A stretch of 64,000 nucleotides of DNA from Octopus sinensis. Its lineage: Eukaryota. The number at the start of each line of letters is the position of its first letter. The first letter of the stretch is position 1. This document shows, in pieces, positions 10,379 to 34,220 of the stretch. The position numbers and the translations under genes are program-made. The notes beneath the pieces were generated by a model, which was not told the origin of the DNA, made no database searches, and saw only the letters and a list, made by a program, of their open reading frames with translations. The stretch spans positions 56,296,001 through 56,360,000 of the forward strand of contig NC_043005.1 of NCBI RefSeq assembly GCF_006345805.1, in the 5' to 3' direction.

Positions 10379-13335
10379 GGCAAAGTTGATCTCGGCACAA
10401 TTTGAACTTAGGATGTAAAGAACCAGAACAAATACCACAAGGTACTTTATTCAATGCTTTAACAATTCTGTCAATCCACTGTTAGTCTCTCTATTAATAA
10501 ACCCCAAATCTTTATATTGTATTTTCCAATATATAACTCAACATTATATTTGGTGTAAGCATTCAAACATCACTTCCTGCTGCATTTCACATGGAATTTT
10601 TGGTCTAAACAATGCAACTTGTAGGCTGGAAAATATGGTAATTAGCTCACCATGGTAAAATTAGAATATGGTTGATATCTTAAAGCATATTTTTGCTAAA
10701 ACTCAGTGTCGTGTCAAAAGAAATTTTGAGACAAAGACCATGGTATAATGGTGCTGCTAAGCGAGGTGCAATACAAAGTTGACTCAGTGAATATGCATTG
10801 AATATGAGAGGCAAAAATTGAATAAGGGGCTTTAACAGAAGACTGCATACCTACTGATAGTTTTTAGTGATTTGGCAAACATTATCCATTCAAATTTGAG
10901 CTTGTATTTTTATTTATTTATTTTTTTAAACTTATATAGTTTTCTTAATATTTAAGAAAATTCACAACTTGATATATCACAAACATGTGCTATTCTCCTC
11001 TTGTCAATGTAAAAATTCCAGGTTAACTAGCTTTTGTTAGCAACAGGTTGCAGGATATCTATAGTTATTCTATTAGACTGCAGTGATGAACACAGCTGCA
11101 TGTGGCACGAGTTAATTATTTCAACTGAATGATGTAAAAATACCAGATTGCTCAAATACAATTACTGAGCAAGGGAGCCTCCTATGTGGTTGCTCAACAT
11201 GCTAGAAACAGTCACCTTACTGTCTTAATACAAGGACACATTAGATAGTGAAGTACAACATGCTCCTAAAAATTTTTTTCAAGAAATGAATGGCCACAGC
11301 TGGAATATTTTTGATTGTAGGTCTGCTCCAGGAGAGCTAATCAACAAGAGAAGTTGAAATATTTGGAATTATATCTAAAGTTTTATTTTTTCTGTTTAAA
11401 CAGTTGACAGATCATCTCAAATAGTTCTCTCTCTCTCTCCCATATATATATATATATATATATATATGTTATGCAAAAGTCATTTGGTTCAGTTTTTTTT
11501 AACTAATTGTTACAATCTTAAAACAGAAATAAGGGTTGTTCTTTCCCTAACAAATATAAGTAGTCATGGTAACTAAACTGATTTAACCCATTTACCATGA
11601 CTGGGTTGTATCAATATTTATATTATTTTCATACATTTTTTTTTTCAAAACCTAACCACTGTTGACACTGTGAAACGTAAAAGTATAAAATGTAATGAAA
11701 ATTTGTCCAATAAATATTCTGAGATTCTTCCAACAAACCTATTATTGCACTAGTTTAATTATTATTTTTGTAATTGTGTAAAAAAAAATGTTTCCCTAAA
11801 AGAACATATTAAGATTACCCTTTTAATCAGATGACACATTCTACATAATTACATATCTGCAATTGCTCATGGCAGATCAGAAATGTTTTATAAATTTTTC
11901 AAAAACTACAGTCCAAGAGGTCACACATGACGTAAATTTATGGTTGACAGGAATCCATAATTTAACATTCTATGGTGTTTTTCTCTCATCTTCTAAAATC
12001 TTTCAAGCACTAAGCTCAAATGAAAAAGATTGCCTATGTGTTTTCAGAATTTGAACGAATTTAGTAAAAAAAAAAAAAATGAATTTAATTTAACCCTTTT
12101 GACACCAGCCTCCCTGAGGCTGCCGTTGGTTATATGATACAAACTTCCGATTTTAAAGTGATCTAAAATAAAAACCTTCCTTCAAAATTTGATGTTATGT
12201 TCCAAACATTAGTCTAATAACAAAGTTATTTCACGAAATTCTTCTTTGTTTTCTCTATTAATTGAAATAGTGACAGTATTTTTTAACAGAATTATGGTAA
12301 CAAAAGGGTTAAGGTTCTTAAAAAATAAGTTTAAATTTCAATATAATCTCAGCCAATTTCAAGCAGGATGATAATACGTTAAGCTCCAAATCAGATTTCA
12401 AGTACTTGCTCTTGATTAGCTAATTCAATTTTGACAGCACAAACTTCAGTCTTTACTAGGTTTTCTTGCTTGATCTGCAAGGGGCATTGTTTATGGCTTT
12501 GGAAGGACCTTTGATGTTGATGAGACTAACGCCGTTCAATTTCTCTCGAAAACCGTATTCAGCTTTCGCGGAAGAGAAAGTTATCCCCCCTTTACTTGAA
12601 TTATTTCCCTTAGACAAAAATCATTGCAAAGGGAACAAACTTTGCGAGCCTCATTAAATTGTCGCTATTTTCTACATATTCCATCAACATCGTTTTAATG
12701 TCCACATTCTGTGTTCGCATATTTCGGACAAAATTTATAGGGCGTATTTTCTAAGGCCGTATACCCTTCCTGTCATCAACCCTCACCTGTTTTCAAGTAA
12801 GAAAATTTTCCGCCCATGACCAGACATGTTTTTACAGATTAGAAGCAGACACTTGGATGGAAATCACACTCCTTTACACATAGAAGTATGCAGGTACGGA
12901 CACATACGCTCGTATACGAGAGGATTTTTTCAGTTTCCATCTACCAAATCTACTCACAAGGCTTTGGTCAGCCCGAGGTTAGAGTAGAAGACATTTGCCC
13001 AAGGTGCTACACAGTGGGACTGAACCTGGAATCATGTGGTTGGGAAACAAACTTCTTACCACATAATATAGTTTAAATAGGCAAGACTATTTTTCAGCAA
13101 AGGTCATAGCAATAACCTAGTTATCGTTTATAGTTTCGGCTACACACCTTACTGATTTACACCGAAAATGAAATAAAACCACCAGCCAAACAGTGGCCAG
13201 CAGGGTGCAGTAAACCTGGAAATGATACAGACCAAGGACATCTGACTGTCTAATTAAAAAGAGAAAATTGTAATTCATAGAAAGAGGGCTAGCACGAAGA
13301 AAAAAACACAGAAAAATATTAATGTATAACCCAAA

Positions 13336-13341
13336 TTTATT
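13336..13341 (-). promoter_or_regulatory. Probable Clc polyadenylation signal AATAAA
   Basis: tttatt on + (AATAAA on -) about 180 nt downstream of the stop codon. Positional inference only. Confidence 0.45.
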
Positions 13342-13519
13342 GACAAGTCTACAAATTCAGTTAACATAATCTATTGATTTTTGATCAATTACTTTCAAGG
13401 AATTAGTAATTGCTTCTAGTTTAAATTTCAACCATGACAACCAAAACAATAGTTTCACAAATCCTGATTCTTCTTTAACATTCTCATTAGCATACAACTA
13501 TTTCATGAGGCTACAATCT

Positions 13520-13691
13520 TCAGCGAACCAGAGGCGTTTGCTTCAACTGTAGCAATATTGATCTCATACGAGACACGTCTTTTGTGTTTTTGGAATGCTT
13601 AGGGTTGAAGTCACAAAGCCGACAGATTTTCTCCCATTCTTGACCAGCAATGCTCTCTTCACGATCCTTCAGGCTTGCTTCTTCTTGTGCC
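13520..13691 (-). CDS. Clc: Clathrin light chain, last coding exon (AQEEASLKDREESIAGQEWEKICRLCDFNPKHSKNTKDVSRMRSILLQLKQTPLVR*)
   Basis: atgtag| acceptor, phase 2 matching exon 4; TGA at 13522-13520. EWE..CRLCDFNPK...DVSRMRS.L..LKQ is the conserved C-terminus. The five exons sum to 624 nt = 207 aa + stop. Confidence 0.96.
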
Positions 13692-14920
13692 CTACATAAT
13701 GGAAAGCAAGATTTAATTAATACAAAAATACAAAGCAAGGTAAACAAAAGAAATATGTACAATATTTACTGCTAGTAAAGACAAAAATATTCCACATTCC
13801 TTTAATAATGTGGTATCCATTGAACAAGTGCAAGCCTGTATTAATAATATCTCAGTAATTAAAAATCTAAAATTTTGTTCATATATGACTATGTGAGTTT
13901 TTGTATCAGTTAATAAATTCATTAATTGCTGGTACACTGAGATATGACCACACATGAACATATAACAGATAGTAGTGAAATTATTTAAGATAACTATGAA
14001 GCTTTAATTTTAAAATGGGGCTTATTTCTTCAATTTAATCTTAGCAATTCAAAATGTTATTTCAGAAATAGACAGCAGTAGAAATCTGTCTAAGTTATAT
14101 GGCAAATAGTTATACAAACAGTACAATTTTATACAGTGCTTCACTAATTAGACTTTTATAGATTAATGGAAAATATAAGTATAATTTTAAAATGAAAATT
14201 AAAAGAAAATTAAATGGAATACCAAGGACCTAAGAGAAATAGAACTTATTCAAGCTAACTTTGCTAAAATACTTAAAATTATTAGCATAAACTAGTATTA
14301 CTTCATATGTAATTAGAGAGACAAAATCGGTTACATTAATTAAATCGTACGAATCAAATTTATCAGAAATCAGTTATCACTCAAATGATAGCATATTCAT
14401 GATATAAGTTACATTTACTCTAATCAATATACTACATCTGAGTTCAGTAATTAAAGCATTTCCAAAATTTTTACAAGCATATTTATATAGAGGCACAAGA
14501 CCTCCAATTAAAGAAAGAAAAAAGATTGCGTGACGTTCATGCCTTTCTGAAGGCTTTTCATAGTAATAAAAAAAACTGTTTTCCATCAGGAATTGAAACT
14601 AGATTGCTACCTCAGTTTGATATACTTATTAAAGAGTTGAGGTACTTTACCAACAAAGAATAATGTAAAATCTAGCAAGATTTCAGTGAAAACAAACAAA
14701 ACTTTATTTGAGAAGGTAATGAATAATAAAAATAATAAACATGAAAAAAAAAAATAGTAATAAAATAATAAAGCAGCCACAATAAAAGCAAAACATATTT
14801 TTCTTTCTTAGTATGAGGAACTTTTAGTGAAAATATTTGGCAAATTGACAAATATGAAGAAATACTCAAGTAGAAGTCATTAATAATTAGGTTAACAAAA
14901 TAACTGGGTTAATAATAATT

Positions 14921-15190
14921 AGTACATTTCAATATAGCAGAGAGGAAGCTACAACTACCAGACAATAGGAATATTTTATATTAAGGGAAATTTACTTTTA
15001 TAAATATTTAATAAAGGTTTTTTTTCTTCATAGCGTTTTACTATCAATGAACTTCAGTACATTTCAATATAGCAGAGAGGAAGCTACAACTACCAGACAA
15101 TAGGAATATTTTATATTAAGGGAAATTTACTTTTATAAATATTTAATAAAGGTTTTTTTTCTTCATAGCATTTTACTATCAATGAACTTC
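14921..15190. repeat. Tandem duplication, 2 x 135 bp, near identical
   Basis: agtacatttcaatatagcagagagg starts at 14921 and 15056; one substitution seen. Confidence 0.92.
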
Positions 15191-18051
15191 CAACTACTAA
15201 AATACAGTATTAGATATTATTATAATGAATTTTCAATTCAATCTTATGAATGTCTATTATATTAGACATTCATAAGGATAAATTTGAGACAGAAAAAGAG
15301 CAGTGAAGAACTAGAACACTGATAGACATTGAACCATAAACTAATTACTTGATAGAATATTCTTTAAATTATTTATGAGAAATATTAAGCCATAACATTT
15401 ATCTCATCATCAAACATTTTGGATCATTTTATACATGATTTTGTTTCATTTTTACATTAATTTTTCCACAATAGCAGGATCTACATTACTCAACCATAGA
15501 GATATTTTGATATTTACATAGTTTCAACATGCACTTTCCCCATGTTTGCATAGGCCAGACAAAAGTTATTGAGGCAGAATTTTGTATGGCCAGATACTCT
15601 TTCAGTCACCAACCTTCCCCATTTTCCTTCAAACAATGAACAGATCAATGGCCTAACATGCTTCCACAAAGGATTACAAAAATATAGTTCTGTATGTATA
15701 ATGGTGACATTTGTTTAATATGCCAAGACAAGGGCAACACACACATTCCAGCATGGAAAACAAACATTAAATGATTTTACACACACTAAAGTATTGAACA
15801 GTAGACTGTATGAGAAAAGGCACTAATGTTCTACTTAAAGCTCAATGTGAGTTCAGAAAGGAGAAGTAGCACTTTGTTTATGTTCAGCCTTAGATTAAGA
15901 AATGTATGGAACAGAACACATTATGTGATCTTAACTTCACAAAGAAATTCAAGTGTAAACCAGTTGAGCCTGTAGCAAATACTCAGGTTTAGATGCTAGA
16001 AGTGTCACTCATCTGTAAAATCCCTACTTACCAAGAAGACAACCCAAATTACACAGATGAACTCTAACATTGTACAGTTTGATATTTGAGTGGGAGACAA
16101 GTAGGGCAGCATGCTAGTATCCACATTATTCTCACTTTGTTTGTCAGCAATGTTCAAGGAGGTATTCCAGAGACAAGACCTGATGATCACCAGTTTAACC
16201 CTTTAGCATTCAGATATTTCAATGATGTGATTGTTTATTTTTAGAAAGACATTGTAGGGTACGTGTGAGAGGCTGAATCTGACTGGTTTGAACATCAACC
16301 AGGTAAAGGCTGAACATGATCAGTTTAGATGCTAAATGGTTAAGGTGTTACAGCTCAAAGCTAAGACTAACACCACATATTAGTAAGAAAAATGTTTGAT
16401 GATCATGTTTTGTCTTCCATACTGTGAAAGATAAGCAGAATATGGAGATTTTTGACAGTGCAACCAAAGAGGTCAGAATATAACATCCAGAATATTGAAG
16501 TTCTTTATTAATTAAATTCCAACTTTAACCAAGAAGCACAACCAGATTCCATCATTATTAAAAGGTCAGAGCTGATGGAGGCAAGATACTTTACCTATCT
16601 GAGTAGTATTATGAGAAATGCTGATAGACTCAATGACAAACTAGATTGCGGGTTGAACGAAGTTAGCTCAGAATTCAGAGGATTGAGAAAGAGAGAGGAA
16701 CTACAAGTATGTCTCAGTCCAAGTTAAATGTGAAGTACACATAGCAGTAGTATTATCCACCTTATTCTACAGATCATAGGCATGGACAATATACTTCAAA
16801 GATAAAATAAACAGCATTCATTCATGATGAGACACCCAAAACAAAAGCATGAACATCACATGATATGGCTCATCCTAAAGAAAACCGAAATCCTTATAAG
16901 GAAGAGAGATATTGGTGCAATGAAATCTCTATAATTTTAAGCAGGTTCAAAAAATGGAGGTAACTTAGTTGCCAAGACAAATACTGTATAAGTGGAAGAA
17001 ATCAGGGCAAACCTTGACCAAGATACAAGGATATGGTTAAACATAATATGAGGAGATTTGATAGCAATAACAACAGCAACTGAGGACAGAAGCCAGTAGA
17101 GGCTTGTGATATTTCATATGGATAGCCAATGACAACTATCAACAAATAGTAAATGATGTTTTATATAAGATATCAATGTTAACTTAGTGTAGGTTAATAG
17201 GTTTATCTGAAATATGTAGGTGTGTCCCACTACAACAAAATTTCTACTAAAGGTAGTGGTGTGTATTAAATATTCAAAATTCACTCAAGCATGGTGTGAC
17301 ACATTCTCACTTTGGAGATGCCTTTCTGCTCTGATGATTAAAACTGTCTCCTGTCATTTGGAATCAACCCAAAGAGAAACAATTACATTTTGATTATATA
17401 TTGTCATATAAGATTTACACATTTAATAATTACTTTAAAACTGCTACAAAATGTAAAGTCAAACATTTTGATAAATGAAAATCTTTTAAAATTTAAAAAA
17501 ACAATTCAATGAAAATAATTGTTGAAAAGAACCAAACATTAACATATGAAGTTAATTGGCTGTTTTATGGTAATCAACCATTTTAACATTTTTCTTGAAT
17601 TAAAAATCATGCAAAAGTTGGAAACTGATTTTTTTTTTTTTTTAAAGAAAAGCAAAGGGAAAAAGCCAAATTGAACAACAACCATCACAACAATTAAGTC
17701 CAGTATTAGGCTTTATAGGAAATTTTATGACCAAAATCAAGAGATACTTATTACCCATACAGTTGGGATAACTGTTTTCCTGAGACTTAAAAAGCAAAGC
17801 TATATTATACAGTATTTACACTAAAAGCATCTACAGAGAATAATCAATCCAGAAAAGAAAGCTAATCCATAGTGGCAGTAAATGTTTAAATTACAGAATT
17901 TTATGGCTAATTCAAAAAAATTTTTTTTTTTTTATTATTATTATTAATTTATTAGAATATAGGGATGAGAAAAGAATTTATCCCTAAAGAGTAGCAGCAT
18001 ATGTATATACTGCATGATAAAACTGCAAAATTACCTACACTGAATACTTAC

Positions 18052-18078
18052 TTTTTTTTCTCCAAAGCCTCTGCATGC
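18052..18078 (-). CDS. Clc: Candidate 27-nt Clc microexon (adds HAEALEKKK)
   Basis: About 35-nt pyrimidine tract ending tcctctacag| and consensus donor |gtaagta; phase 2-2, open frame. Confidence 0.68.
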
Positions 18079-21000
18079 CTGTAGAGGAAACAGGTAAAGA
18101 AAGGGATAGGGAAAATTGTGAGTAAGAATAAAGTACCTGTGGTAATTGCACACCTGTTGCAGCCTTGGATATGTTAAGGCATTAAATTCTAATATAAACA
18201 GATATATAAAAGCACTACCTTCAATGATAATTGCTAAAAGTAAACATCAAAATACTTTAAAAGACCATCTATGAAGACATTTTTCTGATCAAGAAGAAAA
18301 AAAAAATGAAATGTTAGCAGGAAGTCTAGTTTAAAAAAAAAGGAGGAGGAGGAGGAGGAGGGAAAAGGAACAGCAGCTTTTTAAATTTCTCATTAAAAAG
18401 AATTAAAAAATTGGAAGTCAAGTCAAGAAATAAAGAGATAGCAAAACATTATTCAACTTAAAAGTCTACTAATATAAACTGATGTTATATCATTATCATT
18501 AGGCTAGCACAAACACGAATCTGCAATAAAGCATCTGCACCATCTCACCAGTAAGAACAAATACTTCATATTTTCTACTAAACACTTCACCACACAAAAC
18601 TATCTATCTATGAAAACATCATTACAGTTACCTAAAGCATTTTTTTACCCAGCAATTACAGAACAACCCCTTATCAGTATAGCCCTTTACATGCATAAAT
18701 CAAATTTTTGTTATGGCAATGATCACTTTCAAATGGAACACTTCCACATCTCAAACTTATTCTTCAACTTCTGAAAAGAACATAAATCTTATACAAGAGA
18801 CATTGGTTTAGAAGCAACAGCTGAGGTGCATGACCTAGTGGTTAGAATGTTGGATTCGTGATTGTAAAGTCAATAGTTCAATTCCCATACTGGCTGTACA
18901 TTGTGTTTTTGAGCAAACCACTTCATTTCACATTGCTCCAGTCCTCTCAGCAGGATGGATTGCATACAAGAGTGAATTGGTGACATAGGAAAATCTGAAT
19001 GGAGGTCATGTGAGCTACATTTTGCATTCAGTGATCAAAAGGATGATTAGTACAACTTATACTGTGGACCTCGACTTGTTGGGATTGGTTGTTCAACCAT
19101 ATCAAAGGTCATTTGTCAATCAATCAAACAGCTGAGAACAGAATTTTAACAGACATTGGTCTGTAACCAGAAGTTTACACTGAGTTCACAACCAATCATC
19201 AAGAGGATGGTAGATTCATTGGAGTTGATAATTTATGGTATTTGGTTACAGCTCTTTACACTGAGTTCAAATACCACTTGAATCTACTTAGTGTTTCATT
19301 CTTTCAAGATCAATAAAATTACTGGGACTTAATGATGGAGATCAGTAAAAAGAAATCATATCCTCATATCTAATCTAAATATCTCTCTTCCATCCATACA
19401 AGTATCCTACCAAATATAGGATACTTTACGATTAATTGTATCTAACATGGGTTAAATTCTATGCAATCCAATTATATCCAGTACTAGCTTAGCACTAAAA
19501 ACTCACTATCTTCAAAAACAGACTCCTGTAGGTTCTCCCCTATAAAATATCTTTACTTTGGTAAAAGATGACAATGGAGATATTATATTACTCTTGTGAA
19601 ATATTTTCTGGCACAATCTTTGAGTGATATCTAATATCACTCAAATGCCTCAAGATGCATGCAATATATTAGCAATCATCACAAAGAGTCCTGCAGCTGG
19701 TAAATACTCCTACATTTCACTTGTTAGCTAAACCTCATTTCTAGCTTTCCACCATAGAGTATGACTCCCTCCTCCTATCTGTCTATTACTTTAGTTCATC
19801 ATTTGCAGCAGTGTGTTACAAAATGAATGAACACCATCAATTATGAACAGCACCAAATTACAAAAAACTTCTCATTATATATATGATGATGAGACTCTTC
19901 CTTTTATCTCTTTGAAGCCAACAAAACAAGGTATTAGTCAAACACTGGAAAGTGAGGTAGGTCAGGTTCTGACCCATCTCTCCCCTCAAAATAGTTGGCC
20001 TTGCGCCTAAAATTCATTATATATACTCTCATATCTTTTCAATAATGTTTCACGCATTTAAATTTAATTCTGTTCACATCGAATTTTGCTACAATATGCT
20101 GTACAGGGTCAAGAACTTTTTATTTGGACAGTATATCGTTGAAACAAACACATTCCATCACAGAGGAAAAGTGTGCCTGTTATCAAACAAAAGACAATTT
20201 GATTAAAGACTAAAATTTAACTAGGTGAAATGTCATTAAAAAACTAAAAGGAAACCAATACAAACATTTCAGATAAAAACCAGATACAAAATATAGTGCT
20301 ATGTTCCTACACTGTTCTTTATTCAACTGACAAATAACTTATACTGAAATTTGACAGTTGAAGGCATACAACTAACTTTTACCATTTTCCTTTGTTTTGT
20401 TATAGTAGTTTTGAGCCAGAAAATTCAGATGTCTATGACAAGATTAAGCAGTTAATCTTTAAAACGTTTGGCGAGAACAAATATAGGTAATTTTTAAGCT
20501 TTAATCTTTTCGCTGTCTTCAGGCGTTGGACTATGGCTATGCTGGGGCACTACCTTGAAAGGCTTCATTAAACAAATCAACCTCAGCACTTATTTTTTTT
20601 TAAAGCCTGGAACTTATTCTACTGGCCTCTTTTGCAGGGATGTAAACAAACCAACACTGACAGTCAAGTGGTGGTGGAGTGTGAACACAGACACACACAC
20701 ACAACAGGCTTCATTTTGTTTCCACCTATTAAATCCACTCACAAGGCTTTCATCAACCCATGACTAGTAGAAGATATTTGCCCAAGATGCAGTGCAGGGG
20801 GACTGAAATCAAGACCACAACATAATTGGGAAGCAACCTAGTTAACCAGACAACTAAACCTATATGCACGAATATTAAAATTGACCTTTATATTCAAAAC
20901 TTTATGAATTTTAAACATCCCTGATACTTGTGAATATTTACAAACAGTTCAAATCATTTATTGCAATGATATTAATGATAATTATTTTAATGTCACTTTC

Positions 21001-22154
21001 ACAACTGTGTTTCCCAAGATCTACCATATCTATAAATTATTTTTATAATTATCAGACAGTGGTCTAGCAAATGAAAGCATCCTGTAATTTACAAAGATTT
21101 GTAAAAAAAACGACCCAAATGCATATGACAGATAATGATAATTAACGATAGTTAAAATTAGTCTATTTATATATATATAACTTTTATTATCATTATTCTA
21201 CATATGGTTAACTTTTTCTGGATGCTGAACCTTGATTCTATTTTCCAAAACAGTAAATTAACATTAATTTTTATTATCTTTAACTAGCTGGTTTCAGTTG
21301 GGGTGGGGGGATACAGATTTTTTGAGAAGCAGCTAGTCATAAAGGCACTTCCACAGTCACTTAGTGCAAATATGTTACAACTATCTACTACCTCTAGGGA
21401 TCCTTGTAGGAATTCAAACAGGTATTTACCACTGACCATGTCTCCACACATCATTTACAATATTCAACCTTAACCAGCAATCACTCTCTTCTCACTCTTA
21501 CAATCTTATCAATTCTTTCCTATTCTCTTCCTATATTCTTTCATACTCACCTTTTTGTACCTTGAGAGTATACTCTAGTACCTTAGCACCACCATCTTTA
21601 TCTCTTTCCAGTTACACCCACCCACTGCTATGTAATGCAAAGTAGCCTTGTATCTCCTCTGCAGCAAGACAACTGTGACTGCCTGTCATGCTTTAAGCAG
21701 CTCAAAACTTGACATAAAGCCACTTCCCTCTATACTACACCTCCACTCATTTGGGGGAATCTTTTTCTTTGACTTGCAAATTGAACTCAATAGTGCTGGT
21801 GCCACATAAAAGTACTCAAGATGGTTGGTATTAGAAATGGAATCCAGCTATAACAGACATGGGAGCTCAACACAGTCCTCTGGCTTGTTAGATCCTGTGG
21901 CACCATCGAACTCATACCAGCATGGTAGACAAACGTTACATGATGATAAAATATTGTTACAGAATAACAAAATACATTTTCTGAATAAAAGACCTTTGAG
22001 ACTGACCAAGTTGGCTGCTGATAGTAAGTCATACTAAAAGCAGATATCTGGCAAATAAATAACAGACAAATGCTATAACACTATATAGTCAGTGTATTTG
22101 GGGTGGTTGTACAAACTGTAGGAGGAATTAAGAGAAGTTTCTAATAAGATGTGA

Positions 22155-22186
<32 letters not shown>

Positions 22187-22358
22187 ATCAGAATGATGGT
22201 CATGCTAAAGAAATAAAATGATCCCTTTAAAAATAAAATTAATCTCTACAGTGGAACTAAAGATAAATAAAGATTACAGACGAATTGACAACAACAATGG
22301 CAACAACAGCAAATGTCTAAAGTCTACTTAGAGTGCGTCGCTACAGTTTTAGTCTTAC

Positions 22359-22397
22359 CCACAAGTGATGTCTGCAAGCTCGGCTGCGGCAGCAGCT
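22359..22397 (-). CDS. Clc: Candidate 39-nt Clc cassette exon (adds AAAAAELADITCG)
   Basis: ttgttcttccacag| acceptor and TGG|gtaaga donor; phase 2-2, open frame, GC-rich island within an AT-rich intron. Confidence 0.68.
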
Positions 22398-22491
22398 CTG
22401 TGGAAGAACAATGAGATACACACTTACAAGTGCACCAAAGACGACGTATAAAGAAATCAGTTTGACATGTTTATATTCAAAGAGATGTTAC

Positions 22492-22530
22492 CGGAGCATA
22501 GGGGAAATAGCTTGGCGAGGAATTACTGAT
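22492..22530 (-). CDS. Clc: Candidate 39-nt Clc cassette exon (adds SVIPRQAISPMLR)
   Basis: catttgtag| acceptor and CCG|gtaaca donor; phase 2-2, open frame, CpG retained. Confidence 0.55.
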
Positions 22531-22627
22531 CTACAAATGTTCACAAAGTTCATAGTGTTTCATGGTGGAGGGAGACAATTTAAGTCAAGATAATAAAAGG
22601 CTTGAAAGCAGGATGAAATTGTATCAC

Positions 22628-22636
22628 CTGTCATCT
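22628..22636 (-). CDS. Clc: Candidate 9-nt Clc microexon (AGATGACAG; adds DDR)
   Basis: Long T tract + tag| acceptor and CAG|gtgata donor; phase 2-2, no stop. No transcript evidence. Confidence 0.5.
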
Positions 22637-24721
22637 CTAAAAAAAAAAAAAAAATCTAAAAAGGAAAAATGTGAAACCTACAGCTAATATAAAATTAATG
22701 TTCATAGCCACCTCAACATGGCTGTTCCATTCAAATGGACTTTTCTGCAATTTTTTAACCCCGAGAGGAATCTCCTCTAGCTGGTTAACGATGCACAGCT
22801 GCCAAATAAAGTATTATTTTGTTATAATTATAATGATAATTCAATTATTAAAATTACAATTTCAAGCAAAATTGTAATTTTTGACATAGTGCAACAAGCT
22901 TGTTTAAAACAAAGCATTTTAATTCTATTCTATATGTATATTATAATTCTGTATAATTTCTGTTGAAGTAGTTTCACAACTGCCAGATATATCCTATATT
23001 TGAATATAATTTCAAGAACAAACAAATTGAGTAACAGAATGAAAAGACATGATTGGGGTTGATAAAATATTAAAACTATTAAACATTAGGAGTTAACACA
23101 GCAGAACTTACCAGCTGAACTCCCTAAATGCTAAATATGTTATTGGCTATTGTTCTTAATTACTAACAAGACTTTTTTTCTTTTTCTTACCAAGAAGCAA
23201 ATATTACAGCACTTAAATAAGAAAGCATTAATTATACAGCATGAACAAGATAAAAGTGCATATTTATATACTGAAAGATAACACTAGCGCAAAGTTGGAA
23301 CAGTAGTGCCATACACGTGGTGGGGAAAGTGCCATACAGATGGGAACAATATCAATAAAATATAGGGGACAAGAGCAAACGTAGCATAGAACAATAATAC
23401 AAGAGTTCAAAGAACAATAAATTACTGACTTTGGTCACAAATGATTTCATGCACAATGAATACTACTTTCAGTGTTGAGTGGAAATAAATACAACTTAGA
23501 AAATTAATGGATACATATATCATTGGCAAACAAGAATTTTATTTCTCTAGTTTTCCCTTCAAGGTGATAATTATTCAAATGTCTAAACCTGTTATAACGT
23601 TGAAGTCCAAAGAATGTCACTAAATCTGCCACAATTTTTACATTTTACTGTTTGGAGTAGCAGACTTAATCTGTCACCTAGTTTAACACTGCCAACTGGT
23701 CCTTGGATACTGTCCTCCTTCCCTTTCAACAGTCTCAGAGGTCCTATAAAGGGGTCATGTGTACTGCCCTTCCCTCCTAAATAAGTGATAAAGGCTATGA
23801 TTTGAGGGAGATTTGGCTGCAATTTCAAGCAGATCAAACGTTCCTGAATATATTTCCTCATTGGCTAGAGAGACTAGTAAAGTTTGTACTGGCATGAGTT
23901 CAATAAAATAGTAAAATGTTAGTGTGCTGTAAGGAAGAGAAATATTTAACATCTTTAAGAATGCCCATCATCAAACAACAGGCTCTATCTAAAAAGAAGC
24001 TTCAACAATGAATTAAATTACCCATACATTTGGCTCTTGTTCTAATACACAACACTAGATACAATTATTTTACATATCCAAGTTAAAATTTTAGAGAAGC
24101 CATCTACTATTCTATGTGTTTTCATTCAAGAATATTGAAGGTATTACAGCTTCTACAAGTAGAACGAATAGTTTGACTGTTGTCAGGAGGACATCAGAAT
24201 AAATATGTTCAGCAGGAATGAGAATTTTGATTCCAGGTTTTCTTTTTTTTTTTTTTAAACTTCACTGTATTTTCATTCAATCACCAATGTCACTACTTAC
24301 AATTCTAGGTCATTCCATGCCAGTATTTCAGATTATAAAAGTTTTACTAATTTAAGATTTTAATTTTGTTTTTAAGGAATTACACAAAAATATAAGCAAG
24401 GAACAAAATGCGAATCAAAATTCACATTTGGTTATAATATAAATTTTACTTATTTGGCCTCCAAAGACCTACAGATCTTTCTCAAAGATTTAATTCTTAC
24501 TAAAGCAGTCAAGTTAAACACTACAATAATATGTATATCAATCAATCAATCAATGCAACAGTAGGCAAGTGCTTAGTAAATAAAATGTTGAGAGTATTCT
24601 TTTTGTATCAGACAAGAACACTAAAATCTCAATAACTGTATCCCTGAAGGTACAGGATTTAAGTGAAAGGGAAAAAAATTTATAGATAGATGAAAATTTA
24701 TAACTAAAACAGTAGTATTAC

Positions 24722-24833
24722 CGGTTGTTTTCTTTGGTCTTAATAAGCTGTTCTGCCTGATTTTTCAACCAATCTTCAAGCTCTTTCTTTGCAGTTTCAC
24801 GCCATATTTCCTTCTTATTTTCTTCTTCGGCAT
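24722..24833 (-). CDS. Clc: Clathrin light chain, exon 4 (DAEEENKKEIWRETAKKELEDWLKNQAEQLIKTKENNR)
   Basis: ttgtag| acceptor and CG|gtaata donor; 112 nt, phase 1->2. WRE.AKKELEDW...EQL.KTK.NNR helix motif. Confidence 0.95.
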
Positions 24834-25210
24834 CTACAATCGTAAAAGCATAAAATGTAATATAAAAAATATATATGTTCGATAATCTAAGCCTGAATGA
24901 GACAGGTTTCTGTTAGAAGTCTGTAAAACTAAGTCACACGGAACTAAATCAAACTGTTTAAAATAATAACAATATCGCGTGTGTGTGTGTGTGTATTCTT
25001 TTTCAAGAATAGTGTTAACTGACTAAAGCTTTGCTAGCAATACATCAAACAGTCTGAAACTTTGAAGTCATTGTTAACACTATTCTTATAAAATAATAAT
25101 AAATATATACCAGAGAGAAAGTATTGAACAGTTTAACATAAAATTGTTTTTATTTATTGTTATATTTCGGGATGGTCATCATCCCTGCAAAATAAACACA
25201 CACACACTAT

Positions 25211-25438
25211 ATATTCGTTCTTCACATATTTATTACTGATCTTATTTTAACCAATGTCCATTGTCTGGAAATCTTTCTTCACACATCTGTGACCTCTTCA
25301 GCGACACTTTCCATCCTTGTGTGCTTCAGCTCTGCTTAGTTCAGAATGGACAGATGTGTGACGAAAGATTTCCGAACAATGAACACGAGTTAAAATGATA
25401 AAATAAGAACTGTAATAAACGAGTGAAGAACAAATACA
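25211..25438. repeat. Imperfect inverted repeat (about 80-bp arms), Penelope-like pLTR remnant
   Basis: attcgttcttcac...aaatctttcttcacacatctgt versus acagatgtgtgacgaaagatttcc...gtgaagaacaaata. Confidence 0.65.
25261..25307 (-). ncRNA. Degenerate minimal hammerhead-like motif in Clc intron 3
   Basis: tgtcg-CTGAAGA-GGTCAC agatgt GTGAA-GAAA-gattt-c-cagaca. The base of stem II is broken. Confidence 0.4.
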
Positions 25439-25587
25439 TAGTACGTGTGTTTATTTGGTATAAAGAAAAAAAATTTTTAATTACTACCCCAAAATACAAT
25501 ATTTGTTTTAAAACATGGTTTCACATCAGGAATCTTGCAGCACAAATTCATAAACATGTTTATATTTAACTCAACATAAAAATAAAC

Positions 25588-25626
<39 letters not shown>

Positions 25627-27297
25627 TTTAGAAAGTAGATTTATGGAAATAAGTAGTGAAAAAAAAATCCCATCTATTTATTTACTGTTCCAAACAGAAA
25701 ATTTTATATCATGGATAAAATCTTCATCATTTGGATGGGTCATTTAAAATAACTATGGATAGCTAGCTATCAGTACAGATACAGACTTTTGGTTAGGTAT
25801 GAGCAGAGATCAGTGATATCTAGTTCACTAAATTATTATTCTATGCTCAAATCATACCAGTCAATTTTGCCTCGCATCCTTTCAGGAACAATAAAATAAG
25901 TGCCAACAAGCTAATGAAGGAAACTCTACATCATTAGTTTTCCTGCAAGAAACAGTAACCAAATCTTGCAAAACACACATTCTGTCTTTGAAAGGATGAT
26001 GGCCACAGATAGATTGCCTTGATATACTACAGTTAATTTAATCACCTCAACCTTATTGCTTACAAAAAAAGCTCTCCTTTATTAAACCTACAAATATTAA
26101 CCATTAATGACAATCAGCCAACTAATATTCATAGAGTATTCTCTATCACTGTTTAATACATAAACAAATCAGAAAGTCTCTTGCTCTCTCACACACAGTC
26201 TTTATTAATTTGTTTGACCTATGGGTGCAGGTGTGGGTGTGTGGTTGAAAAGTTTGCTTCCCAACCACATGGTTTCAGGCTCAGTCCCATTATGTAGCTC
26301 CTTGGGCACTTACTATAGTCAACAGAAGTCTTGTGAGTGAACTTAGTACACAAGAACTGAAAAAAGCTCATAGTGTGTGTGTGTGTGTCAGACTCTTTAT
26401 CTTGACATTACGTGATGGTTGTAAATGAATGCCACTATCATACAGGCTGTCATTTACTTCCAATATTCTGTGGAAACTTGTCTGGCCATGGGGAATTAAA
26501 ACTTTGCTTGGAAATTTGTCTCAATATTTTCTGTCTAACCCATGCAAGCATGGAAGAGTGGACATTAGAATGATGATCCCACCAAACATTTCAACTCAAG
26601 TCTTTACATATAAACTGTACGGCTTGAATTTAATATTCTGATTTCTGAGAAACAACACATTTGGTTGAATGTGCAACATTAAGACTAAGTTTTGAGAAAG
26701 GTAGAACACAGGTGAATTGAACTAACATTTCAATATCCAAAGAAGTAATGAAATGCAGGAAAGATGACTAGAGTTCTTTCATCATGTGATATGGAAGGTG
26801 CATGATAGGGTGGAAAGGGGGCAAAACAGGGGTTAATCGTTACATAAACTGAAGTGTTACCAACATGATCAAAATCATGGGGCAGCCTAGTCAACAGCTT
26901 ATGTGAGGCTGTTTACTGGGCCTGCTAGAAATAGCACCCAAATCTCCCTCAGAATACATCCTAGCATCTTATGTACAAGGTCAATGGAAGACTATATGAA
27001 CACCACAAGAATACCTATTTCTTTATTACCCACAAGGGACTAGACATAGAGGGGACAAACAAGGACAGACATAGGTATTAAGTCGATTACATCGACTCCA
27101 GTGCGTAACTGGTACTTAATTTATCGACCCCGAAAGGATGAAAGGCAAAGAAGAATACCATTGAGCCTACATCTTTTATATTAGACATTGTATCTTAGAA
27201 GTGAAGTAAGCAATTTGTAATAGAACGAAGTTTTAGCTCAAAGTTACACATTATGCAATATAAGAGAGTAAAAAAAAATGATTTTATAAAACCTAAC

Positions 27298-27418
27298 CCT
27301 TATGTTCAAGCCGTTTCTTTTGTTCTTCTCTCCACAACTTGATTTTCTCAGGTTCTCGGTGGTGTTTATCAACTTGAGCTATAGCAGCATAACCACTTCC
27401 ATCTGTAGGTCCATTAGT
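27298..27418 (-). CDS. Clc: Clathrin light chain, exon 3 (TNGPTDGSGYAAIAQVDKHHREPEKIKLWREEQKKRLEHK)
   Basis: ttgcag| acceptor and G|gttagg donor; 121 nt, phase 0->1. NGPTD..YAAIAQVD and EPEKIKLWREEQ are light-chain hallmarks, including a heavy-chain-binding Trp. Confidence 0.95.
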
Positions 27419-28571
27419 CTGCAAACAAGTTCAATATTCATTCTTTAATACTACAGTATATTACACATCAATTTTCTACCAAAGAAAATGAAAATAAATA
27501 GGAGTCACTGTTATAGAGATACCTAACTTCTTAATGGAAAATCTTACTTCCCATTAACGACACAGTTATTGGAGAATGACAACCCTTAAACTATTCATCA
27601 TCATTATCATAATTTAATGTCTGTTTTCCATGTTGGCATAGGTTGGATGGTTTAACTAGAGCTGGTAAGGCCAGGGTTTGCACCAGGCTGCATTGTCTGT
27701 TCTGGCATGGTTTCTGGGTTCTTTTTATGTGGCACAAGCACCAGTGCTTTTAACATGACACCAACACAAGTGCTTTCTATGTGGTACCAGCACTAGTATC
27801 AATTCTGCTGTGGTGGACAGGTCTTCTTGAGTACAGCGAGGCACCAGACAACTCAGTCCATTGTAATGTCCTTCATAAGGCTCAGTGTCTTGAGATTAGC
27901 CATCAATCATGTGCTACCATCCATGTGATTTAAGGGAAATTTAGCTGCTATATCTACCAGATCAAGGAGGAAGCATTTACTTCAGCAACTCTTAAGCTGA
28001 GTGATAGCAGTTCCTTCATGACATGGGCAGCAAATGTCAAGGGAGCACTAAGTATTTAGAGAGGTTGTGACTTTTCATAGATATAAAATATTTAAGTTAG
28101 GAATAATATTTATATTTTAAATTCATTTTCAAAAAACATCTTTATTGGGATTAAAACAGGAATAAGACAGTTTTATCAGTAAGCAGAAACACAACTGATG
28201 AAGTGCCAAGGTTCAAAATAATTGTATTATATATGTCCTAGCCATCTATACTAATTTTTTTTTAAATCTAACATAAGGAACATTAGTCCACACAAATATC
28301 TAAACAGAGATAATCTGGATGGAATATCATATGGAAATATAGAGAATAAATAAATGTGCAAAATTAGCTTCTGTTTGATTAAAATTTTTTTTTCTTTCTA
28401 TCAAAACATACAAAGAGAACATCTATTAAAAAAAAGTTTGCTGAATTAATTACAAAATGTAAAGGAACACTGAGCTAAATGGTTGTTTAACCTACAAGAA
28501 ATAGTAACCAAACTGGTCTCTACCAAATCCACTCACAAGGCTTTGGTTGGCATGAGGATATAGTAAAAGAC

Positions 28572-28953
28572 GGGGAGGCGCAATGGCCCAGTGGTTAGGC
28601 AGCGGACTCGCGGTCATAGGATCGCGGTTTCGATTCCCAGACCGGGCGTTGTGAGTGTTTATTGAGCGAAAACACCTAAAGCTCCACAAAGCTCTGGCAG
28701 GGGATGGTGGTGATCCCTGCTGTACTCTTTCACCACAACTTTCTCTCACTCTTACTTCCTGTTTCTGTTGTACCTGTATTTCAAAGGGCCAGCCTTGTCA
28801 CTCTCTCTGTCACGCTGAATATCCCCGAGAACTACGTTAAGGGTACACGTGTCTGTGGAGTGCTCAGCCACTTACACGTTAATTTCACGAGCAGCTGTTC
28901 CGTTGATTCGGATCAACCGGAACCCTCATCGTTGTAACCAACGGAGTGCTTCC
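28572..28953 (+). mobile_element. tRNA-derived SINE nested in an older SINE, with 12-bp TSD
   Basis: A box tggcccagtgg, B box ggtttcgattccc; TSD atagtaaaagac at 28560-28571 and 28954-28965. Confidence 0.88.
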
Positions 28954-30113
28954 ATAGTAAAAGACACTTGCTCAAGATGCCATGCAATAGGACTGAACCT
29001 GAAACCATATGGCTGCAAAGCAAGCTTCTTACCACACAGCCACATCTTGGATATTGCAGTCTTAGATATACCATCTCAATAAAAGAAAGAATTGTTACAG
29101 GTGGAATATCTTGAATCCTTATGTCTGTCTGATTACCGATAACCTGGTCTTAAACAACAACTTCATTTTCAGTGCTGTATGTGAGCAATGTAAAGGCACC
29201 TGAGCTGTCAACGATTTTTTTGATAGACTGACTCCATCCAGATTGTTCACAGACATCAGAAGTGTGAAGTATTTAACCAATGTTAGTCTCTGTAAAAGGT
29301 GATCCAGGTCACACAAGAGTATACCAAAAACTCAGACCCCCTAGTCCTTGATTACATAATTTGAGGATAGATTTTAATTAATTATTTTATCTAGGTGTGC
29401 AAGAGTCATAAATTCTGTAGGTGTTTTTCAGCTTTAATAGATAAAAAAAAAACAAGTTGATGGATGTTTTTTTTAAATAAAAGTCTAAAATGAAACTGTT
29501 TGCAATCTAATATGGACACATGGATAAAGTTATACTGGATGTATCAAAGAAGAAAAAATGGGAGAGGATTCTAATGGTTTTTGAGATGTAAGGTTTTATT
29601 AAACAGAAATGAGGAACTGGAAAAAAATTATGAGAAGATGAACTGATCACATTTCTACAAAACATATCTAATTAGCTAAAATGGCAGACATTTGGCAGTA
29701 AAATAGCCAATAGTTAACTTTAAAAACTGGTATAAGGAATCAGATATATGCTTAAAAAAAAACATTAAAATGCATAGTATGTACAGAAACAAAGTTTTAA
29801 ACATTTTTTCCTTGTTCATTAATCTCTGGAATATGTCTTCTAAATCCATACAATTTCTGTGGATTTTCATTTTATGATAATGATAATGAAGCAATTTCTC
29901 AAAAACACTTACAAAACAAAGAAAAAAGAAAATGATCTTTTTAAAACTTTCATTAATGCTGATCAGTATAACTTTTTTAATAACATTCAAAATTAATTTC
30001 TACACATGCAAGTCCTTTCTAAAGGCTACATTCTTATTCATGTAACAATATGTTAACTAAAGATTATTAAGTATTATACATTATAGGATGAAGGAAATAT
30101 GAATCCAGCATAC

Positions 30114-30184
30114 CTGTGGCACATCTGCATCACTCAAACCATTAACTGTTGCACTTGATTCGTCATAGGTGTTAAACCCATCAG
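30114..30184 (-). CDS. Clc: Clathrin light chain, exon 2 (ADGFNTYDESSATVNGLSDADVPQ)
   Basis: ttatag| acceptor and CAG|gtatgc donor. 71 nt, phase 1->0; keeps the frame between exons 1 and 3. Acidic linker with VNG motif. Confidence 0.88.
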
Positions 30185-30699
30185 CTATAATAGAATTAAC
30201 AACAATAACATCATTAAAGCTGAGATATTAGCTTATCAAATACCAGTTTTATTAAATAAGTTGAAAATAGTGGGTGTAAAGGAATAAGTATTATGACTAC
30301 TAATTTTAACCTCTGTTAATATAATTAGAAAATATAAACAGATAACACCAATTATATTCTAATTATAGAAATCAGCAAAACTGAAAATATAAAGCAAGAT
30401 ATGATCAATTAAAAACTGACTTAACACAATTACAAACAGACACATAGATATGTGCATGTGTGTTATTTATTAGGCTATTATATAGGAATAGATAAGAGAG
30501 AAAAATCCTTGCACTATTAATAGTGGAAACCTGAGTGTAGAGAGGACACCTTTAGTCCTGACGCATAATCACTTGTGCTAACAGCACAATACAATACCAT
30601 CAACCCATGCTGTAAAGTGGTTGATTAGAAATGCATTCAGCCAATAAAATCGTGCCAAAATTATGAGTCACAAATACAATGTAAAACTTTAATTTCATA

Positions 30700-31970
30700 T
30701 ACAAGACTAACACTCATCCTGTTAGTTTTGTGTACATTAGTGGGTTCAACAGTTGGGAACATCTGGTCATGTATAACAACTCAGTGACTCTTTATCAAAT
30801 GACTGTACAAACTATTTCATATACGGGAAACATTTTCAAACAACTCATCACAGGATACATCCATCTTCTTGTCAAGTACAAAACCGGTTCACCACCATCA
30901 ACAATACATCTGAAGAGACCATATAGATATGCAGGAGGGGGAAAAAGTTTTACAACAGCCATTTTGGTTCCACCTATTTGGTGTTAATGAGTTGATACTA
31001 ACATAGTTGACATCAGATATTCTGTCCCTAGGACTTTTGAAGTTGTAACAATTTCGTTTTGATGGACATCCATATTCTGAGGGATGGCAAAGCCTTTGAC
31101 AGTCCAACTAGCTAGAGTTGACTCCAATTCCTGAGCCACATCTGGTTCAACCATCCCATGGAGTATCTTGCTGATGAGAGTATGGCTGGAGTAGACGAAA
31201 GAAAGATAGCCATCAGAACCAGGTCCACTGACTCTGACAGGCAGTTTAGCCTGTTGCCAGCCAGTACTGTCAAAACTAATATTGCCAATCAATTCAGACC
31301 AGCACCAAATAGTGTTATCAAAATCACTGAAGTGGTCTCTGAGCGAGTGACTTGGCACACTACATAGTGAGAAAAGGCAGAGCAAAGCAATTCCTCAAGA
31401 TGAAGAGTGCCAGGTCTGCGTCAATGAGGCACAATCTCTTGGTCATCTTGAACAAATCCGCAAGCTTGGTCTCCAGGCACTCTGTTATGGCTTTCAAGAG
31501 GACTGGGAACCAAGAATGAAGTCAGAATCCTTTGGTGTCGGCTGAGCCTCCACCAAGACAGACTGAATGTTGAGTATGGCATCCCGAAATTTGGCCTCAC
31601 CACAACTCACATTTATCACCTCTGACTCGGACAGGTTGATCTCAAGCCCAAGTAGCTTAGTGCTGGGATAATCTGCTGAAGGTCCCCAAGGTACTAGACT
31701 TTGAAGGGTGAGCATACTGATCAGGCAACATTGTCAACAGCCAATGTAAAAAAAGTGGATCTAGAGGGTCACCCTGCTAGACACCTGTAAAAAAAGCGAC
31801 CCTGTTGTCAGCAGCCATGAGTGAGCTGGGTGTACTATAGTAGCAGTATATATAAGTGGATGTAATAAGGGAGCACATCTTAGACACGTCTCTAAGGTGT
31901 GGTCACATCTGAAGCTGTTGAAGGTCTGTTTTCTTAAATTCAGCTTCAGCAGGAGCCAAGGTGACAAGAT
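30700..31970 (-). mobile_element. Decayed CRE-clade non-LTR retrotransposon (RT region)
   Basis: Frameshifted remnants FNSFRCDHTLE..LRCAPLLHPLIY, LGLEINLSESEVI and GWQQAKLPVRVSGPG resemble CRE RT motifs FNS.RRD.ML, LGL.LN..KSE and W.QA.LPVR.GGLG. Confidence 0.7.
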
Positions 31971-33089: not shown

Positions 33090-33345
33090 AATACTTCGTC
33101 CCTTGACTATTACTAACATTCTACAAAGATCAGATGAGGTTCAAAGTAGAGTGTTTCTCCTACAAAAGATAATATTGCTGCAACACATATACACTCACTT
33201 ATATATTAGCCTGCATCCAGAGAAAGTCATTCAACTGACTGGCATACGGTCTCTCAAAGACACACTGCAGCTCCAGGCTCACAAGCATGCTGTCTCCTCT
33301 CTGCCTTTTCAACCCTTATTACAATTGCTTCTATTTCTCAAATGA
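33090..33345 (+). mobile_element. CR1-like LINE RT C-terminal fragment
   Basis: LTFYK.Q.R.KVEC ... IQLTG..SLKDTLQ.QAHKHAVSSL remnants. Confidence 0.55.
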
Positions 33346-34120: not shown

Positions 34121-34220
34121 TGGTTTCTCTAACTTATGCCAGTATAGTGAAGCAGGCATGAAAAACAAAAAAAAAAAAAAGAAACGATGTAGTTATCTGT
34201 CCAGATATTATATCAGGATA

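What the first reader, a model, noticed from the sequence alone, without database searches (positions are those of the whole stretch)
18052..18078. Isolated 27-nt microexon candidate (HAEALEKKK) in Clc intron 4
Seen: a long pyrimidine tract (ttttccctatccctttctttacctgtttcctctacag), a 27-nt open frame and a perfect gtaagta donor, compatible with exon 4, exon 5 and the upstream cluster. With all four segments the insert is 38 aa. Established: LCa's brain insert is also built from two separately spliced pieces. Inference: an independently regulated second cassette.
Basis: partly seen in the sequence, partly recalled or inferred. Interest (0 to 1): 0.7.

Follow-up and report, generated by a model that had tools for sequence, protein, structure and literature searches.

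The report
Octopus clathrin light chain 27-nt microexon
The 27-base segment is a real alternatively spliced microexon of the octopus clathrin light chain gene that adds nine amino acids (HAEALEKKK) where vertebrates place their brain-specific inserts, but public gene models of three Octopus species already contain it.

Summary
On the minus strand, 18078..18052 is a 27-nt open segment in phase with both neighbouring exons. It follows a 37-nt pyrimidine tract plus AG and is followed by GTAAGTA. The window is Octopus sinensis (100% identical to GCA_006345805.1), and the gene is its single clathrin light chain gene.

The exon is not new. RefSeq and ENA models of O. sinensis, O. vulgaris and O. bimaculoides contain ...KTKENNR-HAEALEKKK-AQEEA... 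Other models skip it, carry only the upstream 13-aa cassette (22397..22359), or carry both, so all four combinations are annotated.

It is one of only two islands in the 11-kb intron that align with Argonauta hians. There it is unannotated but keeps its 27-nt length, frame and splice sites (HAEASDEKK). Cuttlefish has a 27-nt, same-phase exon in the same place (HSSEMGSDQ), and an assembled transcript contains it.

The insert lies exactly where vertebrate neuronal light-chain inserts lie, and AlphaFold2 predicts it extends the long heavy-chain-binding helix.

Neural specificity was not tested. Verdict: real, conserved, already annotated, unstudied in the literature searched.

The parts
18052..18078 (-). 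27-nt alternative cassette microexon, phase 1 to 1, encoding (R)HAEALEKK(K)
   Evidence: Sequence read. Present in annotated isoforms P0001, P0002, P0122, P0128, P0129 and P0130. Conserved in Argonauta as HAEASDEKK.
18079..18115 (-). 3' splice site: 37-nt pyrimidine-rich tract ending in cag; the AG exclusion zone reaches 58 nt upstream
   Evidence: The last ~28 nt align with Argonauta.
18045..18051 (-). 5' splice site GTAAGTA. If it is not spliced, the frame reads AAG TAA (Lys-stop), as in O. sinensis isoform X6.
   Evidence: P0009 ends ...HAEALEKKK. GTAAGTAT is invariant in Octopus and Argonauta; Sepia has GTGAGTAT.
18027..18106 (-). Island conserved between Octopus and Argonauta around the microexon (80 nt, 77.5% identity), one of only two such islands in the 11-kb intron
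   Evidence: blastn. Between O. sinensis and O. bimaculoides, 160-nt windows here are 99.4% identical against an intron mean of 93.3%.
22359..22397 (-). Upstream 39-nt cassette exon (AAAAAELADITCG), the partner cassette in the same intron
   Evidence: Isoforms P0004, P0121, P0123-P0126, P0128 and P0129. 35 of 39 nt are identical in Sepia.
24722..24833 (-). Constitutive exon 4 (DAEEENKKE...LIKTKENN, ending with CG of the split Arg codon), the splice donor for both cassettes or for the last exon
   Evidence: all isoforms contain it.
13520..13691 (-). Coding part of the last exon (AQEEASLKDREES...KQTPLVR, stop), the acceptor for exon 4 or either cassette
   Evidence: all full-length isoforms contain it.

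Best explanation
The segment is a genuine alternatively spliced cassette microexon of the single clathrin light chain gene of Octopus sinensis. It is already annotated. When included, it inserts nine residues (HAEALEKKK) between KTKENNR, the end of the heavy-chain-binding helix, and AQEEAS..., the start of the C-terminal segment. It is used in combination with an upstream 13-aa cassette, giving light chains with 0, 9, 13 or 22 extra residues. All of this is shown. The following is inferred. The insert continues the long alpha-helix by about 2.5 turns. That lengthens and re-phases the link between the heavy-chain-binding region and the C-terminal part, which sits at the triskelion vertex. This is the site where vertebrate neuron-specific inserts act on the knee of neighbouring triskelia and on lattice curvature. 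By analogy the octopus insert probably tunes coat geometry in particular tissues, most likely neurons. Cuttlefish keeps the length, phase and position but not the sequence, which suggests length and a hydrophilic character matter more than specific residues.
For: Sequence anatomy and phase are. The splice-pattern scan finds this as the only hit in 64 kb, with 0.03 expected per intron. Window identity comes from L004 (O. sinensis GCA_006345805.1), 100% over 25,894 nt. Annotated proteins containing the insert are XP_029641094.1/CAI9729140.1 (P0001), XP_014774092.1 (P0002), CAI9729139.1 (P0122), CAI9729146.1 (P0130) and XP_036361865.1/XP_036361866.1 (P0128/P0129, both cassettes). Alternative forms in the O. 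vulgaris annotation were produced by PASA from Iso-Seq and RNA-seq (PMC10700109). That is a pipeline separate from NCBI's, though its homology evidence included UniProt octopus proteomes, so it is not fully independent. On conservation, only two islands in intron 4 align with Argonauta, and the microexon is one of them. Argonauta keeps the AG, 27 nt, the open frame and GTAAGTAT. Sepia pharaonis has a 27-nt, same-phase exon between the 13-aa exon and the last exon. That exon is present in model P0132 and in the assembled transcript P0137. Between O. sinensis and O. bimaculoides, identity is 99.4% over the exon windows against 93.3% for the intron. On position, the HMMER alignment to PDB 6sct_D and 6wcj_B puts the insert exactly at the vertebrate 18-residue insert. 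On structure, AlphaFold2 predicts one helix from 114 to 190 running through residues 169-177, with pLDDT 91-94. The vertebrate mechanism is described in PMC7519287.
Against: I saw no sequencing reads. The evidence for use in Octopus is gene models built by others from transcripts. The only assembled transcript I saw with such an exon is from cuttlefish (P0137). Tissue specificity is unknown. The Argonauta annotation lacks the exon. The amino-acid sequence is weakly conserved (HAEALEKKK, HAEASDEKK, HSSEMGSDQ), so orthology with the cuttlefish exon rests on position, length, phase and the initial His. The cuttlefish version is not obviously helical. In Octopus the 3' splice site has no UGC within 70 nt, which is the hallmark of Srrm/eMIC-dependent neural microexons. 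The functional effect rests entirely on analogy with vertebrates.
Confidence: 0.88

Rival explanations
1. The segment is a chance splice-site look-alike (pseudo-exon) that is never or only accidentally spliced, and the gene models are annotation noise.
For: It is only 27 nt in an AT-rich 11-kb intron. Relaxed criteria give 0.37 chance candidates per intron. I did not see reads.
Against: Annotation pipelines from two different groups in three species contain it. Its length, frame and both splice sites are kept in Argonauta, where the rest of the intron no longer aligns. A same-size counterpart is present in a cuttlefish transcript.
Confidence: 0.02
2. Its main output is a truncated light chain or a non-productive transcript. 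When the donor is not used, the frame ends at once (AAG TAA), giving a 190-aa protein without the C-terminal 56 residues (O. sinensis isoform X6). The exon would then act as an alternative terminal or poison exon.
For: P0009/XP_036361867.1 ends ...HAEALEKKK. AATAAA signals lie at 17953-17948 and 17936-17931, downstream of the exon.
Against: Most models splice the exon to the last coding exon in frame. The putative poly(A) site is followed by a genomic run of 13 A, a classic internal-priming artefact. In Sepia the donor is GTGAGT, so read-through gives CAG TGA, also a stop, but no such model exists there. Conservation of the 27-nt length and open frame is not needed for a terminal exon.
Confidence: 0.06
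3. The conserved island is a non-coding element, such as an intronic enhancer, snoRNA or miRNA, and the open frame is incidental.
For: Conservation extends about 25 nt into both flanks.
Against: There is no Rfam hit in 13000-25000. The fold z-score is only -1.85. What is conserved is the AG, the GTAAGTAT and the frame. The segment is single copy in the window. Proteins contain the peptide.
Confidence: 0.01
4. It is a real cassette exon but not neural. It would be a broadly or developmentally used variant, as vertebrate CLTA exon 6 is in heart and muscle.
For: Octopus has no UGC near the 3' splice site. Vertebrate CLTA exon 6 is also included in heart and skeletal muscle (PMC8712872). Short inserts at this site occur in bivalves, gastropods and nemerteans.
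Against: Nothing here tests tissue use in either direction. The only argument for neurons is analogy with vertebrates.
Confidence: 0.4

Closest known systems
Vertebrate neuronal clathrin light chain inserts (CLTA exons 5 and 6, 18 + 12 residues; CLTB exon 5, 18 residues)
   Same: The insertion point is the same, directly after ...K(T/N)K.NNR and before A.EEA.... In CLTA, two separately spliced cassettes give four isoforms (PMC8712872), as do the two octopus cassettes. The location is next to the C-terminal segment that binds the heavy-chain trimerisation domain (PMC7519287).
   Different: The sizes differ (9 and 13 residues against 18 and 12). There is no convincing sequence homology. HMMER pairs HAEAL with IADKAF, but nine residues cannot establish homology. 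Octopus has a single light-chain gene. Neuron specificity is not shown.
Annotated isoforms of the same gene in Octopus sinensis, O. vulgaris and O. bimaculoides (XP_029641094.1, CAI9729140.1, XP_014774092.1 and others)
   Same: They contain the identical exon. The peptide HAEALEKKK lies between the same flanking exons, and the exon DNA is identical in all three genomes.
   Different: Nothing differs; the finding rediscovers these models.
Cuttlefish (Sepia/Acanthosepion pharaonis) CLTB 27-nt exon HSSEMGSDQ
   Same: It is 27 nt, in the same phase, with the same flanking exons. It holds the same order in the intron, after the conserved 13-aa exon, and starts with His.
   Different: The DNA is not alignable by blastn, and seven of the eight residues after the His differ. 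The donor is GTGAGT and UGC directly precedes the AG.
Bilaterian neural microexon programme (Srrm234/eMIC-dependent exons)
   Same: The size is 27 nt or less and frame-preserving. The polypyrimidine tract is long, the AG exclusion zone is 58 nt, and the gene belongs to the vesicle-trafficking class.
   Different: Octopus has no UGC close to the 3' splice site, though Argonauta and Sepia have one at -5. The donor is a perfect consensus rather than weak. Dependence on eMIC was not tested.

Membership tests
Alternative cassette microexon | Very short internal exon (27 nt or less) bounded by AG and GT | tested here: met
   27 nt, cag| and |gtaagta.
Alternative cassette microexon | Length is a multiple of three and the frame is open in the phase set by the flanking exons | tested here: met
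   CG|G CAT ... AA|G reads R-HAEALEKK-K with no stop.
Alternative cassette microexon | Both inclusion and skipping products exist | tested here: met
   P0001, P0130 and P0128 include it; P0005, P0131 and P0121 skip it. These are gene models, not reads.
Alternative cassette microexon | Exon and flanking intron conserved across species | tested here: met
   The Argonauta island is 80 nt, with frame and length kept. Identity between O. sinensis and O. bimaculoides is 99.4% here against 93.3% for the intron.
Neuronal clathrin light chain insert (vertebrate type) | Inserted between the heavy-chain-binding region and the C-terminal domain, after ...NNR | tested here: met
   HMMER alignment to 6sct_D and 6wcj_B.
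Neuronal clathrin light chain insert (vertebrate type) | Sequence homology to the vertebrate 18- or 12-residue inserts | tested here: inconclusive
   Only a weak HAEAL/IADKAF pairing, too short to score.
Neuronal clathrin light chain insert (vertebrate type) | Inclusion restricted to neurons | not testable with these tools
   No read-level or tissue data were available.
Neuronal clathrin light chain insert (vertebrate type) | Changes lattice curvature or synaptic vesicle formation | not testable with these tools
   Known only for mammals (PMC7519287).
Srrm/eMIC-dependent neural microexon | UGC motif close to the 3' splice site | tested here: not met
   In Octopus the nearest upstream UGC is at -72. 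Argonauta and Sepia have UGC at -5.
Srrm/eMIC-dependent neural microexon | Long AG exclusion zone and long pyrimidine tract | tested here: met
   58 nt without AG; 84% pyrimidine in the last 38 nt. The criteria are from PMC8797185.
Srrm/eMIC-dependent neural microexon | Inclusion depends on the eMIC domain of Srrm234 | not testable with these tools
   This requires an experiment.

The most novel reading that the evidence does not exclude
Coleoid cephalopods have kept, since before octopuses and cuttlefish diverged, a two-cassette splicing module (39 nt + 27 nt) at exactly the light-chain position where vertebrates evolved their neuron-specific inserts. The 27-nt exon would be selected for length and phase rather than sequence, acting as a 2.5-turn helical spacer that re-phases the C-terminal vertex-binding segment. 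It would be included mainly in neurons. That would make it a parallel, independently evolved way of tuning clathrin coats for synaptic vesicle recycling in two large-brained lineages.
Probability: 0.3. Interest if true: 0.55.

Novelty: already known. Interest (0 to 1): 0.27.

Why it matters
The exon itself is ordinary and already annotated. The comparative picture is of modest interest. The clathrin light chain position after ...NNR carries alternatively spliced short inserts in cephalopods, other molluscs, nemerteans and vertebrates. Octopus uses two cassettes combinatorially, as mammalian CLCa does. No paper in the searched library describes this for cephalopods. If inclusion proves to be neural, octopus would offer an independent system for asking what light-chain inserts do for synaptic vesicle formation.

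Tried and rejected
(1) The exact look-up of P0002 and P0008 found no contig, because only the longest product of a gene is on record. I used the longest isoforms instead.

(2) A second protein search, with a profile of the insert-bearing C-terminal halves, looked for squid, Nautilus or other octopod transcripts. It returned no further cephalopods. The phylogenetic depth therefore rests on Octopus, Argonauta and Sepia.

(3) blastn of the microexon region against the Sepia locus found nothing. The Sepia counterpart was located through the annotated peptide.

(4) Regulatory motif scan. GCAUG at the first exon base is kept in the three octopods but not in Sepia. UGC at -5 is present in Argonauta and Sepia but not Octopus. 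No consistent signal emerged.

(5) RNA structure and RNA family explanations were rejected: no Rfam hit and a fold z-score of -1.85.

(6) A repeat or transposon origin was rejected, because the 1-kb region is single copy in the window.

(7) P0049 (HDETETKRD, a nine-residue insert starting with His) was checked as a possible distant counterpart. It is not close to cephalopods, at 59% identity or less to anything fetched, so it was not pursued.

No annotated isoform and no conserved island supports them.

Full report
**Observation**

Reading the minus strand gives ttttccctatccctttctttacctgtttcctctacag | GCATGCAGAGGCTTTGGAGAAAAAAAA | gtaagtattc.
- The open segment is 18078..18052 (27 nt), the acceptor AG is at 18080-18079, and the donor GTAAGTA is at 18051-18045.
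- The upstream coding exon ends at 24722 with CG of a split codon, and the last coding exon begins at 13691 with G.
- The last 38 nt before the AG are 84% pyrimidine, and there is no other AG for 58 nt.

I ran a mechanical scan to test chance. The criteria were a GTAAGT donor, an AG acceptor, at least 80% pyrimidine at -23..-4, a length of 9-60 nt in multiples of three, and an open frame in phase 1. This is the only hit in the 11,030-nt intron and the only hit on either strand of the 64-kb window. Markov simulations of the intron average 0.03 hits.

**What the gene is**

Stop-free stretches on the minus strand hold the clathrin light chain exons:
- MADFENFES...EEDPAADFLAREQ at about 37413
- ADGFNTYDE... 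at 30182
- TNGPTDGSGYAAIAQ... at about 27420
- DAEEENKKE...KTKENN(R) at 24833..24722
- AQEEASLKDREES...KQTPLVR at 13691..13520

A protein search returned Octopus clathrin light chains as best hits. The locus fetched for O. sinensis isoform X1 (L004, GCA_006345805.1, CM016867.1) is 100% identical to window 38413..12520 over 25,894 nt. O. vulgaris is 98-99.6% identical and O. bimaculoides 90-94%. The window is Octopus sinensis.

**The exon is already annotated**

Public proteins fall into four classes at this site:

| Insert | Proteins |
|---|---|
| HAEALEKKK only | P0001 (XP_029641094.1 O. sinensis X3 = CAI9729140.1 O. vulgaris), P0122 (CAI9729139.1), P0130 (CAI9729146.1), P0002 (XP_014774092.1 O. 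bimaculoides X2) |
| 13-aa cassette AAAAAELADITCG only (exon 22397..22359) | P0121, P0123, P0124, P0125, P0126, and the assembled transcript P0004 |
| Both cassettes (22 aa) | P0128 and P0129 (O. sinensis X1 and X4) |
| Neither | P0003, P0005, P0006, P0131 |

- The alternative forms in the O. vulgaris annotation came from two rounds of PASA updates on Iso-Seq and RNA-seq alignments (PMC10700109). This evidence comes from a different pipeline than NCBI's, though that pipeline also drew on UniProt octopus proteomes as homology evidence.
- The longest annotated insert is 22 aa.

**Conservation**

- Against Argonauta hians (L002), the whole intron gives only two alignable islands: 22439..22189 around the 13-aa exon, and 18106..18027 around the microexon.
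- The Argonauta sequence is ...cctctgcag|GCATGCTGAGGCTTCCGATGAAAAGAA|gtaagtat... It is 27 nt, open in the same phase, and reads HAEASDEKK. It has two synonymous and four non-synonymous base changes. The Argonauta gene model lacks it (P0007).
- In Sepia pharaonis (L003) blastn finds the 13-aa exon but not the microexon.
- The Sepia annotation (P0132) and an assembled transcript (P0137) carry ...KENNR-HSSEMGSDQ-AQEEA.... The encoding exon is cccctgcag|ACATTCTTCCGAAATGGGATCTGATCA|gtgagtat, again 27 nt in the same phase. It lies between the 13-aa exon and the last exon.
- Between O. sinensis and O. bimaculoides the intron is 93.3% identical on average. The 160-nt windows over the microexon are 99.4% identical, among the top five of 526. 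Those over the 13-aa exon are 100% identical.
- The A8 run is the same in all three Octopus assemblies. Argonauta has GAAAAGAA, the same length. The frame does not depend on an assembly error in the homopolymer.

**Alternatives examined on both strands**

- The plus strand has no long open frame here, and the 1-kb region is single copy in the window.
- Rfam finds nothing in 13000..25000.
- The local RNA fold is unremarkable, with z = -1.85.
- A repeat, a small RNA or a purely non-coding conserved element do not explain the pattern as well as an exon does. What is conserved is the AG, the donor and the frame.

**How it probably works**

*Shown.*
- The insert falls exactly where the 18-residue neuronal insert of mammalian light chain b lies, in the HMMER alignment to PDB chains 6sct_D and 6wcj_B.
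- AlphaFold2, run on a 30-sequence alignment, predicts a single helix from residue 114 to 190 of P0001. It runs straight through the insert at 169-177, with pLDDT 91-94. The overall model is poor outside the helices, with mean pLDDT 66.8.

*From the literature.*
- Vertebrate CLCa takes two neuronal exons (18 and 12 residues, four isoforms) and CLCb takes one (PMC8712872).
- The inserts lie near the trimerisation domain. They change heavy-chain knee conformation, cage size, lattice quality and budding, and light-chain composition affects synaptic vesicle pools in mice (PMC7519287).

*Inferred.*
- Nine helical residues lengthen the connector by about 2.5 turns.
- This shifts the position and rotational register of the C-terminal segment relative to the heavy-chain-binding helix.
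- That could alter contacts with neighbouring triskelia in the way proposed for vertebrates.
- The weak sequence conservation (HAEALEKKK, HAEASDEKK, HSSEMGSDQ) against strict conservation of length and phase suggests a spacer-like role.

*Not tested.* Whether inclusion is neural. The 3' splice site has the long pyrimidine tract and long AG exclusion zone described for eMIC-dependent neural microexons (PMC8797185). However, Octopus lacks the nearby UGC, while Argonauta and Sepia have UGC at -5. GCAUG at the first exon base is kept in octopods only.

**Read-through form**

O. sinensis isoform X6 (P0009) ends ...AAAAAELADITCGHAEALEKKK. That is what results if the donor is not used (AAG TAA). AATAAA motifs follow at 17953-17948 and 17936-17931, but they run into a genomic stretch of 13 A. 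This model may reflect internal priming rather than a real truncated light chain. I rank it as a minor rival.

**Comparison with what is known**

As a sequence feature, the exon is already known, because it is in RefSeq and ENA annotation of three species. As biology, it is an unstudied relative of the vertebrate neuronal light-chain inserts. It has the same site and the same two-cassette logic, but different sizes and no demonstrable homology.

Short alternative inserts at this site are widespread in lophotrochozoans:
- KHNDVTESQG in heterobranch gastropods
- RGNM, KHNM and RDNM in bivalves
- VNQAEFFKERE in the nemertean Lineus

The site, rather than any one exon, is the recurrent feature. 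Searches of the paper library found nothing on cephalopod clathrin light chain splicing.

**Verdict**

It is not supported for the 38-aa, four-segment insert. Novelty is "already known". Interest is low to moderate, mainly for the parallel with vertebrate neuronal splicing, which needs tissue-resolved junction counts to be established.

Noticed in passing
window 22359-22397 (-), with intron to 22189; L003 about 50680-50718; L002 about 9760-9800: The upstream 13-aa cassette exon (AAAAAELADITCG) is far more conserved than the microexon. In cuttlefish 35 of 39 nt are identical (AAAAAELAEITCG), although no cuttlefish model contains it. About 170 nt of downstream intron is conserved in Argonauta, which suggests intronic splicing control elements.
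   Followed up: partly
window 17919-18051 (-): O. sinensis isoform X6 reads through the microexon donor (AAG TAA), giving a 190-aa light chain without the C-terminal domain. Two AATAAA motifs are followed by a genomic A13 run, so the model may be an internal-priming artefact or a real alternative 3' end.
   Followed up: partly
window 35396-36059 (-): A 329-nt tandem duplication (2 copies, 94% identical) carries the 17-aa cassette GLEDDNPPVADVTPPTT (exon ending at 35820). O. vulgaris models include this cassette zero, one or two times, so a recent exon duplication adds a proline-rich repeat to the N-terminal region.
   Followed up: partly
window 14921-15190: A 135-nt unit repeated twice (99% identical) lies inside the same intron. 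It is among the most conserved windows between O. sinensis and O. bimaculoides (99.4%).
   Followed up: no
window 38114-41729: Upstream of the gene there is a block of simple repeats: ATAT and TAGA microsatellites, and a 73-nt CT-rich satellite of about 14 copies at 40415-41440. This block explains the extreme GC and AT skew of 40001-42000.
   Followed up: partly
proteins P0017, P0026, P0038, P0045, P0049, P0090 and others: Other lophotrochozoans carry unrelated short alternative inserts at the same light-chain position. The Lineus insert VNQAEFFKERE resembles the start of the following exon (AAEQAFVQERDE), which hints that such cassettes can arise by partial duplication of the downstream exon.
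   Followed up: no
L001-L005, first ~560 nt; in the window beyond about 38400: A leucine-rich-repeat protein gene of about 620 aa lies head-to-head upstream of the clathrin light chain gene. The arrangement is the same in Octopus, Argonauta and Sepia, so this synteny is conserved.
   Followed up: no
window 30987-31394 (-): A 136-codon stop-free stretch lies inside intron 1, with other long stop-free stretches nearby (28495-28797). These may be transposon remnants; I did not examine them.
   Followed up: no
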